Source of the DNA: Trichoplax adhaerens
Lineage: Eukaryota; Animalia; Placozoa
Assembly (NCBI RefSeq): GCF_000150275.1
Contig: NW_002060948.1
Span: 3,980,759-4,044,758 of the forward strand
Length of the DNA: 64,000 nucleotides
Direction of reading: 5' to 3'
Position numbers and translations under genes: made by a program. The notes under the pieces are model-generated. The model was not told the DNA's origin. It made no database searches and was given only the letters and a program-made list of their open reading frames with translations. Below are positions 57,913 to 61,443 of this stretch, piece after piece. The stretch's first letter is position 1, and each line of letters begins with the position of its first letter.

Positions 57913-60900
57913 TTACAACGTTATGGTTTGTCGTAAGGTAAACCTTGTAATATCTAATTCTTGCGAAGCCGTACTATTCATGGACATTTGCGACGCACGG
58001 AAACTGTTACCAATTTGGCTACAAGGGATATCCTCTTCGTTTCCACTAGAAAAGTTAGACTCCAGCAGATACGCGGAAATTTTTTTACAGTCCTCCATAT
58101 TTTTAATGATCTTCTTCATATCCTAGGAAAAAGGAATCGTATCAACATCATGTTACTAATTCAACAATTTGAATTTGGAAACTCAAAACTTTAACCAATT
58201 ATATACATTCAAATCGTGATTTCTCAAAACTATCATTGGCCAGTAAAATGCCGATAACTCGTACATATTTACCGAGTAGCTAACATTCGCAAGATGACCA
58301 CAAACTTTGAAACCATGCTTGATGAATTCTTGTGTATATTTTTCCATGTTAATATTACTTAGCCATCTTTTTAACACGTAATCCTAATTTTAGCATAATG
58401 CAGTACTGTTGTCATGACAAACAATAAATCACCGTAGACACTAACCTACTGATGGAAAGATTTAGGTCAGCTCCGTCAGAATTCTCTTTTGTCGTTACAG
58501 CCTAATATAAGATTATGAACGCAATTTGTATGATACAATCAGTGTATTCCTTGCAAATAATGCGCGTTCTAAGAACATAAATTCTATTCCAAATAATAAC
58601 TTATAAACTTAAAAACTACAACTACCGATTATACTGTATGTGCGCATATGAACAGATTGTACATGCAACAATACTAATTTATGTACAGTAGTATGAATCT
58701 TACATTTTGCAGCGTGTCTAAGTTGCGGCTCTGACGGCGGACAAGTTCTTCAGTGTTTGTTCGTTCAAGAGGTGCAGTTAAAGTACCATGACTATAATAA
58801 GGAAGATTTAAAATCACTTTACTAGTTGTATAGCCGGATACTAACAAGGATGGGTAATGTTTTTTTACCTTTTAATTTCATTGATTTGGGCATCAGATAG
58901 CTTGTCTAAAACTTCCAATGATTCGCTCATTTTAGCTAAGATCTCATAATTTTTCCTTCCACGGACCTGTAAGAAAAGCAATCGTAAAATGTCTCATCAA
59001 ATGGGAAGTATATCACAGCTTTTACACCGTACGCATAAGTACCGTGATTGTGAAGACGTCATCGTTGCTAGTACTCTCCACGCTGCGCTTCATGATACGT
59101 TTACTTTCATTGGAGATTACACCAGTTACCTCCCTTGAGACTAGATTTACCATTAACATGTTAGGTATAGTGATACCAAATCACAATCAGAGTAAAATAC
59201 CGTATGATAGAAATGTTAATACGAGATAAGTACAGTACCAGTTTTGGAAGTTTTTAGCTTCTTATTAGGGGGTTGCTTATGCTCTTTTTCCGACTTCATC
59301 GCAGCGCGTTCTTCATTACTTCTATCTCTGCCGGGGCAAGCACAAACTCGAACTTCAACCTTCTTGCGACCTAAAACGTTCGTTCTGTAGCATATAACAC
59401 ATATAGAATATTGCGGTAAGCTACACTGAAACAAGCTATTACTTCCGATAGTTTAGCAGAGGTCAATAATTTTTAATGAGAACTAAATGTCATACCCATT
59501 TTCTAGAGTAATTACTAATTCGATAGGACGTCGATTTATACTTCCAGAGCAAGATGAAAAGCACATGAACTGGTACAAGAGAGTACTGCGCAATTCTCCA
59601 ACTAATATTGAATAAATCATACAAGAGATCAAGATTTCAATATCTAGCCACACCGACAGTCGATATTTTAAATAATTATAAAAACAAGTATTCACTTGAA
59701 ATACAATAATAATCTGATATTCATAAAGGATTTGTCACACCTATTACAATTACCGAACATGCAGGTAATAACAAATGAATTATAGATTTCATATATGTTT
59801 TAAGCTAGTTTACTCATTCGATTCAGTTCTTTTACCTGCTGGTGCAGTATACGGAACCCTTACAGAATGTCGTCCAGAAGTATCTTCGTAATATTCCGCT
59901 CTTTGACTTTCACAGCGAAGAATATGGTCAGAAGATTCGTATTCTAATATAAAAAGATATAATTAACTTAAAATACTTTTATAGGTAGTTCAAAAGCAAG
60001 TCTTCGATCTTACTTCCTTGATCTCGCAAAGCATGATTAGGACATCTTCTGACAGGCTCATAAACATCCTGGGGTTTTGTATACATTACATAGGCCCTTA
60101 TGTAAGAATTAGCTGGCGGCTCACCTGGGATTATTAATTGGTTACAATTACGTCGCGTCGCTAAACTACCGTATGCTATTTTAAATGTATAATCCATACG
60201 TTCTATGGTGATGTGGATAGGAAACAAACACTCCATCTTGATGAATAACTTCTTCAACATGGTAGAATACTGCAAAGAAAAATTTCGATGTCTAAATTAA
60301 TTATCACTACTAACCTTCCTCGATACCATAAGATCGTTAATTGTAGTTTTACAATTTACATATTCTAACCGTATTATTTGTGGCCTTTGTTGGATTATCG
60401 TTCTGTTTGGTTAAGAAAATGATTTACAGATCATTATGTTTGTATAGCCTTATTAAAATTTGATACGATAGTTTAGAGGGCGCTTACTATACGTGCTTAC
60501 GTTACCTGATCAATAGCGATGTCGAAGCCAAAATTGCCAATATATTCAGCACTGGGGTGTAAAATAATAATAATTTAGTATTAGCATACTCTAGCGTAAT
60601 TGATATACTGTATTGTAGTTTGTCTCATTAACACAGATCAGTTTTAACTGTGATTACAGTACAGTACTATTTCTTGCTTACTTTGAAGGCAGAGACGGAT
60701 CCCTCTTTAGCGGTGGTGACGTTTCAGCACTGACACCGTTAACGGCTTGGCCGTAATACGCTTCGCGAGCTTTATCAGCAGAACTGGAAACGTTCTATAT
60801 TAAGATATAGGATAATAAAAATTACGCATCACATTATTTATTGCTTGTACAATACTAACACGATCCAAAGTTATGCTACTCTTACGTCACTAAATGTTCT

Positions 60901-61443
60901 TGGGGACGGAATTTGATTAACGGCAAATTCGCGAGGAAGTTGCCCTACCTGCCCATCTGGATAACCAGCGCTAATGTATTGAGGCTCGTTTGGCCTCATT
61001 AAATAGCGATCTACATTAAGGGACAATTGAGCTCCTACTTAAAATAGCAAAGCACACAAACAGTATCAATTTTTTCGGTTCTCAAATAGCTATCGAATGT
61101 AAATATGTACAATATACCATCAGGATTTTGCTCGGAGTACGAATAAATAGCTGTACCCCTAGATGTAACAAATTCAAAGAAATCTACGTTTAGTTGATAT
61201 CATCGGTGCAGAAGATACATAGATTGGAAATCAGCTTAATCTTAACGATAATTATCTAATTGAAGCAACCTTTTTACTACATTTTAAACATTATGCATAT
61301 TGTTGCAGTTTAACGACAATTTATACTAACTCGTCTTCGTTAGTGTTGAACTTTCCTTGAGTAATTTCATCGATCATCAATTGCCATGAAGACGACAGTT
61401 CTTGCGAGAACGATAACTGAGATAGAGTCGGTTCATCAGACAT
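57913..61443 (-). CDS. TP53: p53/p63/p73-family transcription factor with TA, DBD, oligomerisation, SAM and TID domains (17 coding exons)
   Basis: Exons (minus) 61443-61331, 61158-61118, 61010-60886, 60794-60682, 60551-60506, 60402-60370, 60269-60200, 60124-60014, 59943-59836, 59601-59496, 59384-59239, 59140-59043, 58966-58869, 58791-58704, 58501-58446, 58366-58273, 58122-57913. Motifs VRRCPNH, FMCFSSCSGSINRRPI, EVRVCACPGRDR, FTITVRGRKNYEIL, SAM SISRWLSNINMEKY and TID RFTLRQTITL*. Confidence 0.96.

What the first reader, a model, noticed from the sequence alone, without database searches (positions are those of the whole stretch)
59522..59569. p53 L3 loop natively carries the G245S hotspot residue plus an aromatic residue at the N239 suppressor position
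Seen: the exon reads F-M-C-F-S-S-C-S-G-S-I-N-R-R-P-I, which aligns without gaps to human Y236-M-C-N239-S-S-C-M-G-G245-M-N-R248-R-P-I. Position 245 is therefore Ser and position 239 is Phe. Established: G245S is a destabilising cancer hotspot in human p53, and aromatic substitution at 239 (N239Y is the classic case) is a second-site suppressor that rescues G245S. The K120, R175, R248, R273 and R282 equivalents and the zinc ligands are intact. Inference: this may be a natural compensated pathogenic deviation, mutation and suppressor together, in an early-branching animal.
Basis: partly seen in the sequence, partly recalled or inferred. Interest (0 to 1): 0.8.

Follow-up and report, generated by a model that had tools for sequence, protein, structure and literature searches.

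The report
Placozoan p53 with natural Ser245/Phe239
The single p53-family gene of the placozoan Trichoplax normally carries the serine that is the human cancer hotspot G245S, next to a phenylalanine already shown to rescue that mutation in human p53. That phenylalanine is the ancestral state of the family, so it is a permissive background and not a Trichoplax-specific repair.

Summary
Window 59569-59522 encodes FMCFSSCSGSINRRPI in the exon-7-equivalent of the known Trichoplax adhaerens p53/p63/p73 homolog (TRIADDRAFT_64021, UniProt B3RZS6, "Tap53"). Alignment to a full-length human p53 chain puts Phe at 239 and Ser at 245. K120, R175, R248, R273, R280, R282 and the four zinc ligands are intact.

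- For: N239F and N239Y are both published single-site suppressors of human G245S (PMC2978351). Every natural Ser/Thr245 I found sits on Phe/Tyr239: Trichoplax H1 and H2, two nematodes, four unnamed sequences, and in published supplementary sequences three ichthyosporeans and one Monosiga paralog. No fixed Ser245 with Asn239 was seen.
- Against: aromatic 239 is ancestral and common with Gly245 (53 of 90 Gly245 clusters, also noted in PMC8901663). It predates Ser245, so it was not acquired as a compensator. Outside the Asn239 sequences (vertebrate-type plus one ascidian) the 239/245 association is not significant (p=0.32). Four origins on aromatic backgrounds have a chance probability of about 0.16. 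Positions 246 (Ile/Val) and 243 (Ser/Thr) co-vary with 245 much more strongly.

Best reading: Ser245 is a conditionally tolerated substitution on a pre-stabilised ancestral background. It is a neat but modest example of a known phenomenon in a known gene.

The parts
59522..59569 (-). L3-loop peptide FMCFSSCSGSINRRPI, human p53 residues 236-251
   Evidence: Translation; ungapped alignment to human p53 chain 6xre_M and to PDB DBDs
59558..59560 (-). TTT codon, Phe at human position 239 (residue 293 of the annotated protein)
   Evidence: The same residue as the published G245S suppressor N239F (PMC2978351)
59540..59542 (-). AGT codon, Ser at human position 245 (residue 299). It is one transition away from a Gly codon (GGT)
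   Evidence: Identical in Trichoplax sp. H2
59537..59548 (-). Ser243-Gly244-Ser245-Ile246. Positions 243 and 246 co-vary with Ser/Thr245 across homologs
   Evidence: Ile/Val246 in 7/7 Ser/Thr245 clusters against 10/90 Gly245 clusters. Ser/Thr243 in 5/7 Ser/Thr245 clusters against 5/63 Gly245 clusters among clusters without Asn239
59496..59601 (-). Exon equivalent to human TP53 exon 7 (strand S8, L3, strand S9), with an AG acceptor and a GT donor
   Evidence: Sequence; 100% match to residues 280-313 of P0001; Pfam P53 E=7.9e-12
57913..61443 (-). Whole gene TRIADDRAFT_64021 (Tap53): transactivation domain, DNA-binding domain, tetramerisation domain and SAM domain
   Evidence: Open frames; tblastn of P0001 on the window; Pfam P53, P53_tetramer and SAM_2 on separate exons; identity of P0001; only p53-domain locus in the 105.6-Mb genome
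60015..60269 (-). DBD exon carrying R175, C176 and H179. It includes the 75-nt in-frame segment 60125-60199 that the public annotation reads through
59836..59943 (-). DBD exon equivalent to human exon 6
59239..59384 (-). DBD exon carrying R273, C275, C277, R280 and R282

Best explanation
This is the L3-loop exon of the single, known p53/p63/p73-family gene of Trichoplax adhaerens. The protein is a zinc-dependent, tetrameric, sequence-specific DNA-binding factor. L3 supplies two zinc ligands (C238, C242) and the minor-groove contact R248.

Ser at 245 is the normal, fixed placozoan residue. It is most likely a conditionally neutral substitution that could fix because it arose on the ancestral background. 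That background was already more stable than human p53. It has aromatic Phe239 packing beside the zinc site (inferred by homology). N239Y adds about 1-1.5 kcal/mol in human p53, and N239F and N239Y both rescue G245S. Other stabilising residues are native too (Leu133, Ala203, Phe236). The loop has also co-adapted locally (Ser243, Ile246).

So it is a compensated pathogenic deviation of the 'permissive residue first, deviation second' type, not a mutation followed by an acquired suppressor.

Shown: the sequence, the numbering, the intact functional residues, the phylogenetic distribution, and the published suppressor data. Inferred: that Phe239 contributes materially to tolerance of Ser245 in the native protein.
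For: - Sequence and numbering.
- Gene identity.
- Tap53 binds consensus and Trichoplax p53 response elements in vitro, so the protein is active (PMC5039725).
- N239F and N239Y are single-site rescues of human G245S (PMC2978351 Table 3).
- N239Y adds 0.9-1.5 kcal/mol and stabilises the L2/L3 interface, with less flexibility in L2 (bioRxiv 10.1101/2021.02.26.433080).
- G245S lowers the Tm only from 42-44 to about 39 C (PMC6152093).
- Phe/Tyr239 with Gly245 occurs in 53 clusters. These include annelids, Priapulus, spiders, sea stars and Branchiostoma. [quoted passage not shown]
- All 7 Ser/Thr245 clusters have Phe239. All 4 Ser245 sequences among published non-metazoan homologs have Phe/Tyr239.
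- Leu133, Ala203 and Phe236 are native.
- The AlphaFold model of the DBD has pLDDT above 90 and superposes on 7PC6 (TM 0.93, rmsd 1.5 A) and on human T-p53C-G245S, PDB 2J1Y (TM 0.92, rmsd 1.9 A).
Against: - Because aromatic 239 is the majority non-vertebrate state, its presence beside Ser245 is expected by chance: Fisher p=0.32 without Asn239 clusters; four origins all on aromatic background p about 0.16; zero aromatic losses in the Ser/Thr clade p about 0.27.
- The stronger co-variation is with 246 and 243, not 239.
- Trichoplax lives well below 37 C (my own knowledge), so a 1 kcal/mol cost may need no compensation at all.
- Tap53 did not transactivate in human cells, so full activity is not demonstrated.
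- The tested construct probably carried a 25-residue intron-encoded insertion.
- No stability or mutational data exist for the native protein.
Confidence: 0.55

Rival explanations
1. Phe239 is incidental. Ser245 is tolerated because of local loop co-adaptation (Ser/Thr243, Ile/Val246), the many other background differences (about 60% of DBD residues differ from human), and the low body temperature of the animal. Reverting Phe239 would only cause a generic loss of stability that is not specific to Ser245.
For: Ile/Val246 accompanies Ser/Thr245 in 7/7 clusters against 10/90 Gly245 clusters (p about 1e-6). Ser/Thr243 does so in 5/7 against 5/63 (p=4e-4). Aromatic 239 gives p=0.32 outside Asn239 clusters. 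All four non-metazoan Ser245 sequences, which were collected independently of my query, also have Ile246. G245S lowers the Tm of the human domain only to about 39 C.
Against: N239F and N239Y are experimentally sufficient to rescue G245S in human p53. No Ser/Thr245 was found without an aromatic 239. The Fisher tests ignore shared ancestry. My query itself had Ser243 and Ile246, which favours such hits.
Confidence: 0.3
2. One reading: Ser245 arose as a damaging change, and Phe239 was then acquired or specifically retained in placozoans as its second-site suppressor.
For: The two residues co-occur, and the pair is a proven mutation-suppressor combination in human p53.
Against: Phe/Tyr239 is present in annelids, Priapulus, spiders, echinoderms, Branchiostoma, corals, choanoflagellates and ichthyosporeans, mostly with Gly245. 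It therefore predates placozoan Ser245. Asn239 is the derived state, seen only in vertebrates and an ascidian.
Confidence: 0.05
3. Ser/Thr245 together with Ile/Val246 marks a functionally distinct L3 loop. It might alter DNA-binding cooperativity or specificity, or provide a regulatory hydroxyl. It would be adaptive or inherited from an ancient paralog, and not merely tolerated.
For: The same motif type recurs in placozoans, nematodes, ichthyosporeans and one of two Monosiga paralogs. With L3 columns removed, Trichoplax still groups with the nematode sequences (SH-aLRT 90). In human p53, G245S perturbs residues of the DBD-DBD interface on DNA (PMC6152093).
Against: All grouped branches are long (1.0-1.6 changes per site). 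An AU test does not reject nematodes grouping with other ecdysozoans away from Trichoplax (p=0.31). Tap53 binds the human consensus element. There is no functional evidence for a different specificity.
Confidence: 0.1

Closest known systems
Human p53 G245S with the second-site suppressors N239Y or N239F (yeast rescue screens; crystal structure of T-p53C-G245S, PDB 2J1Y)
   Same: The same two positions and the same kind of residues: Ser at 245 and an aromatic at 239 beside the zinc site. 2J1Y also shares Leu133 and Ala203 with the Trichoplax protein. It is among the better structural matches of the model (TM 0.92, rmsd 1.9 A, 39% identity).
   Different: In human p53 both changes are engineered or selected on an Asn239/Gly245 wild type. 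In Trichoplax both are wild type and Phe239 is ancestral. Trichoplax also has Ser243 and Ile246 where human has Met243 and Met246.
Alvinella pompejana p53-family DBD (PDB 7PC6; PMC8901663)
   Same: Best sequence and structure match (E=8.7e-50; TM 0.93, rmsd 1.5 A). It has FMCFSSC with Phe at 239. The authors showed that this Phe packs like Tyr in N239Y, and they noted aromatic 239 in basal lineages.
   Different: Alvinella has Val243-Gly244-Gly245-Leu246, which shows Phe239 without Ser245.
Nematode p53-like proteins of Romanomermis culicivorax (UniRef A0A915HIL8) and Plectus sambesii (A0A914W5F3)
   Same: CFSSCSGSINRRP and CFSSCTGTINRRP: Phe239, Ser/Thr243, Ser/Thr245 and Ile246, with a SAM domain.
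   Different: They belong to a distant phylum, so by the species tree the origin is probably independent. They are only 26-30% identical overall and have no functional data.
Compensated pathogenic deviations: a human disease residue that is wild type in another species
   Same: It meets the definition. The human hotspot residue is the fixed wild type of another species, and a known suppressor residue is present.
   Different: The candidate compensator predates the deviation, and its role in the native protein is untested.

Membership tests
p53/p63/p73 transcription factor family | p53 DNA-binding domain (Pfam PF00870) above the curated cut-off | tested here: met
   The L3 exon scores 45.9 bits. 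Two other DBD exons score 43.8 and 34.5 bits against a cut-off of 27, and a fourth scores 22.9 bits, below it. It is the only such locus in the genome.
p53/p63/p73 transcription factor family | Zinc ligands C176, H179, C238, C242 and DNA contacts K120, R248, R273, R280 | tested here: met
   All are aligned and identical to full-length human p53 chain 6xre_M.
p53/p63/p73 transcription factor family | Tetramerisation domain. For the ancestral p63/p73-like type, also a C-terminal SAM domain | tested here: met
   P53_tetramer E=3.7e-12 and SAM_2 E=4.8e-5 on downstream exons.
p53/p63/p73 transcription factor family | Sequence-specific binding to p53 response elements | not testable with these tools
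   Published: Tap53 binds ConA and Trichoplax elements in vitro but gives no transactivation in H1299 cells (PMC5039725).
Compensated pathogenic deviation with identified compensator | A residue identical to a human pathogenic variant is the fixed wild type in another species | tested here: met
   Ser at 245 in T. adhaerens and Trichoplax sp. H2. G245S is a structural hotspot (PMC6152093).
Compensated pathogenic deviation with identified compensator | The proposed compensating residue suppresses the variant in the human protein | tested here: met
   By literature: N239F and N239Y each rescue G245S (PMC2978351 Table 3).
Compensated pathogenic deviation with identified compensator | Deviation and compensator co-vary across the phylogeny beyond background | tested here: inconclusive
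   7/7 Ser/Thr245 clusters and 4/4 published non-metazoan Ser245 sequences have aromatic 239. So do 53/90 Gly245 clusters. p=0.03 with the Asn239 sequences (vertebrate-type plus one ascidian), 0.32 without them, and 0.16 when weighted by tree length.
Compensated pathogenic deviation with identified compensator | Removing the compensator in the native protein is harmful specifically in the presence of the deviation | not testable with these tools
   It needs a double-mutant cycle at the bench.

The most novel reading that the evidence does not exclude
The [Ser/Thr]243-Gly244-[Ser/Thr]245-[Ile/Val]246 loop is a recurrent alternative L3 architecture of the p53 family. It has evolved, or survived, only on aromatic-239 backgrounds in at least four holozoan lineages: placozoans, nematodes, ichthyosporeans and a choanoflagellate paralog. 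That would be a natural case of historical contingency. The vertebrate change to Asn239 would have closed this path and turned Ser245 into a cancer hotspot. These proteins would then be natural templates for rescuing G245S.
Probability: 0.3. Interest if true: 0.6.

Novelty: new member of a known kind. Interest (0 to 1): 0.4.

Why it matters
G245S is one of the commonest p53 cancer mutations, and its rescue by stabilisation is an active drug-design idea. A wild-type p53 that lives with Ser245, beside a residue already proven to rescue G245S in human p53, is a ready-made natural test system. It could show how much of the rescue comes from position 239 and how much from the loop neighbours 243 and 246. 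It would also illustrate why a residue that is harmless in the ancestral protein became pathogenic after the vertebrate lineage lost the aromatic at 239.

The limits are plain. The gene, its protein and the aromatic 239 in basal lineages are already published, and the comparative data cannot prove dependence.

Tried and rejected
- **Spliced model.** I built no joined spliced model. Exons were searched one by one by reference. For whole-protein work I used the database's own protein P0001, which reads through a 75-nt in-frame segment.
- **Human sequence.** No contig in this work was taken for human. Human p53 appears only as PDB chains in tool output and was used for numbering.
- **Word search with a 4-sequence alignment.** It was swamped by 8000 candidates and returned only two of the query sequences, so that search was wasted.
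- **Word search with Plectus P0035.** It gave six hits, so nematode sampling could not be widened.
- **Word search with P0001 DBD.** It was dominated by fish p53.
- **Taxa of four Ser/Thr245 sequences.** P0004, P0013, P0046 and P0078 could not be named; only accession numbers came back. P0004's contig matches the window's L3 exon at 77% DNA identity, but it lacks the upstream intron, so I did not take it for a close placozoan.
- **Other placozoan genera.** None were found in the protein collections.
- **Gene tree.** It put Trichoplax with the nematodes. I rejected this as evidence of a single origin because all the branches are long and the AU test does not reject the species-tree arrangement.
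- **Literature.** I found no paper that mentions Ser245 in Trichoplax. Lane et al. 2010 is not in the library.

Full report
**Observation**

The coordinates 59522-59569 translate to FMCFSSCSGSINRRPI on the minus strand. The plus strand gives nonsense with a stop. Reading the minus strand gives:
- Phe239 = TTT at 59560-59558
- Ser243 = TCT at 59548-59546
- Ser245 = AGT at 59542-59540, one transition from a Gly codon
- Ile246 = ATA at 59539-59537

The peptide lies in an exon (59601-59496) with an AG acceptor and a GT donor. I searched exon by exon by reference and built no joined spliced model. For whole-protein work I used the public database protein instead.

**What the gene is**

The window's genome has 105.6 Mb in 1414 contigs, and this is its only locus matching Pfam P53. 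Separate exons match as follows:
- P53 DBD on four exons: 45.9, 43.8 and 34.5 bits, above the cut-off of 27, and 22.9 bits, below it
- P53_tetramer, E=3.7e-12
- SAM_2, E=4.8e-5

A full HMMER scan with the 34-residue L3 exon found a 576-residue protein that is 100% identical over the exon (P0001). An exact look-up names it TRIADDRAFT_64021 / UniProt B3RZS6, 'Cellular tumor antigen p53', Trichoplax adhaerens. So this is the known placozoan p53/p63/p73 homolog, Tap53. Nothing here is a human contig.

phmmer aligns P0001 to full-length human p53 (chain 6xre_M, where index equals residue number) without gaps across L3.
- F293 corresponds to N239 and S299 to G245.
- K120, R175, C176, H179, C238, C242, R248, R249, R273, C275, C277, R280 and R282 are all identical.
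- The same alignment shows Leu at 133, Ala at 203, Phe at 236, Ile at 113 and Lys at 268.

Two further substitutions of the 'superstable' human quadruple mutant M133L/V203A/N239Y/N268D are therefore native here. That mutant is named in PMC8901663 and PMC6152093.

Trichoplax sp. H2 has the identical L3, so the residues are fixed and not an error.

**What is established about the two positions**

- G245S is a structural hotspot. It lowers the Tm of the human core domain from 42-44 C to about 39 C and perturbs L2/L3 and the DBD-DBD interface (PMC6152093).
- N239Y adds 0.9-1.5 kcal/mol and stabilises the L2/L3 interface, with less flexibility in L2. It rescues G245S (bioRxiv 10.1101/2021.02.26.433080).
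- A saturation screen of the whole core domain recovered exactly five single-site rescues of G245S: N239F, N239Y, F113L, S240Y and T123P (PMC2978351, Table 3).

That makes the mechanistic idea credible.

**Distribution among homologs**

The exon scan returned 99 clusters (50% identity representatives). I extracted 98 L3 motifs from them and from one coral sequence.

Ser or Thr at 245 occurs in seven clusters:
- Trichoplax
- Romanomermis culicivorax (nematode, SGSI)
- Plectus sambesii (nematode, TGTI)
- four sequences known only by accession

All seven have Phe239.

Gly245 occurs in 90 motifs, with Phe (48), Tyr (5), Asn (27), Leu (9) or Arg (1) at 239.

Named Phe/Tyr239+Gly245 species are Alvinella and Paralvinella, Owenia, Helobdella, Priapulus, two spiders, three sea stars and Branchiostoma. 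The coral Orbicella also has Phe239 and Gly245 but carries Ser244. Asn239 is confined to vertebrate-type sequences and an ascidian. Leu239 occurs in a tick and in Limulus.

The only non-Gly245 on Asn239 is a 74-residue fragment with Asp245, and its cluster mate has Gly.

An independently collected published set of non-metazoan homologs (PMC6981761 supplements, machine-read text) shows:
- Ser245 in Sphaeroforma, Creolimax, Ichthyophonus and one Monosiga brevicollis paralog, all with Phe/Tyr239 and Ile246.
- Gly245 in Salpingoeca (two proteins), Chromosphaera, Capsaspora, Corallochytrium and the other Monosiga paralog. The last two have Leu239.

**What this means**

Aromatic 239 is ancestral and Asn239 is derived. 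Phe239 was therefore not acquired to compensate Ser245. At most it was a pre-existing permissive residue.

But the positive signal is weak:
- Fisher p=0.03 over all clusters, and p=0.32 once Asn239 clusters are removed.
- On a tree built without the L3 columns, 64% of branch length is on an aromatic background. Four independent origins all on that background therefore have p about 0.16. Zero aromatic losses inside the Ser/Thr clade has p about 0.27.

Ile/Val246 (7/7 against 10/90, p about 1e-6) and Ser/Thr243 (5/7 against 5/63, p=4e-4) track Ser/Thr245 much more closely. Two caveats apply. These tests ignore shared ancestry. My query itself carried Ser243 and Ile246, which favours such hits. 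The non-metazoan set does not depend on that query, and it agrees for 246.

**How many origins**

The gene tree groups Trichoplax with the nematodes and P0013 (SH-aLRT 90), but all of these are long branches. An AU test does not reject nematodes sitting with other ecdysozoans apart from Trichoplax (p=0.31). By the species tree I count at least four lineages: Placozoa, Nematoda, ichthyophonid Ichthyosporea and a Monosiga paralog. This is inference, not proof.

**Function and structure**

Tap53 made in vitro binds a consensus p53 element and Trichoplax elements, up to about 30-fold over control. It did not transactivate in human H1299 cells (PMC5039725).

An AlphaFold model of P0001 with 38 homologs gives a DBD with pLDDT above 90. 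The L3 block averages 80, and residues 181-200 average about 50. The model superposes on Alvinella 7PC6 (TM 0.93, rmsd 1.5 A) and on human T-p53C-G245S, 2J1Y (TM 0.92, rmsd 1.9 A).

**Verdict**

The gene and the aromatic 239 are already known. In the searchable literature I found no mention of Ser245 in Trichoplax or of its pairing with a proven suppressor residue.

The most likely reading (0.55) is a conditionally tolerated Ser245 on an ancestral, pre-stabilised background in which Phe239 contributes. The main rival (0.30) is that Phe239 is incidental, and that local co-adaptation at 243 and 246, the wider background and low temperature explain the tolerance.

It is a neat, testable example of a compensated pathogenic deviation, but of modest surprise. 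Interest 0.4.

Noticed in passing
window 60125-60199 (minus strand); residues 181-205 of P0001: The public protein model reads through a 75-nt in-frame, stop-free segment with GT and AG ends. This gives a 25-residue insertion in the DBD that no homolog has, and AlphaFold scores it at pLDDT about 50. It is probably an unspliced intron. The published Tap53 constructs (pUC57-ZS6, 66.2 kDa with tag) appear to derive from this 576-residue model. That could bear on the reported lack of transactivation. It is also noted by the scan as s1-767963.
   Followed up: partly
window 60015-60269 and 59836-59943 (minus strand); P0001 residues 144, 165, 257, 290: Trichoplax p53 natively has Leu at human 133 and Ala at 203, two more substitutions of the superstable human quadruple mutant. 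It also has Phe at 236, and Ile at 113, close to the G245S suppressor F113L. The background as a whole looks pre-stabilised, not just position 239.
   Followed up: partly
P0241/P0242 (Orbicella faveolata) and P0098 (Phallusia mammillata): Gly244 is not invariant either. The coral has Ala-Ser-Gly-Pro-Ser at 243-247 (Ser244, with Phe239). The ascidian has Pro-Thr-Gly-Ile at 243-246 (Thr244, with Asn239).
   Followed up: no
P0002 and cluster mates P0217-P0221 (transcript-like contigs, organism unknown): An 855-residue protein carries two tandem p53 DNA-binding domains. Each has its own L3 loop (FMCLGSC..GGLNRRAL, Leu239).
   Followed up: no
window 59496-59601 and flanking introns: The L3 exon starts at the codon for Val225 and ends within a codon or two of the human exon 7/8 junction. 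The intron positions around human TP53 exon 7 therefore seem conserved to Placozoa. The human exon limits are from my own knowledge and were not tested here.
   Followed up: no
window 61330-61443 (minus strand): The N-terminal exon encodes the MDM2-binding motif with Leu, Trp and Met where human p53 has F19, W23 and L26, exactly as described for Tap53 in PMC5039725. This independently confirms the identity of the gene.
   Followed up: yes
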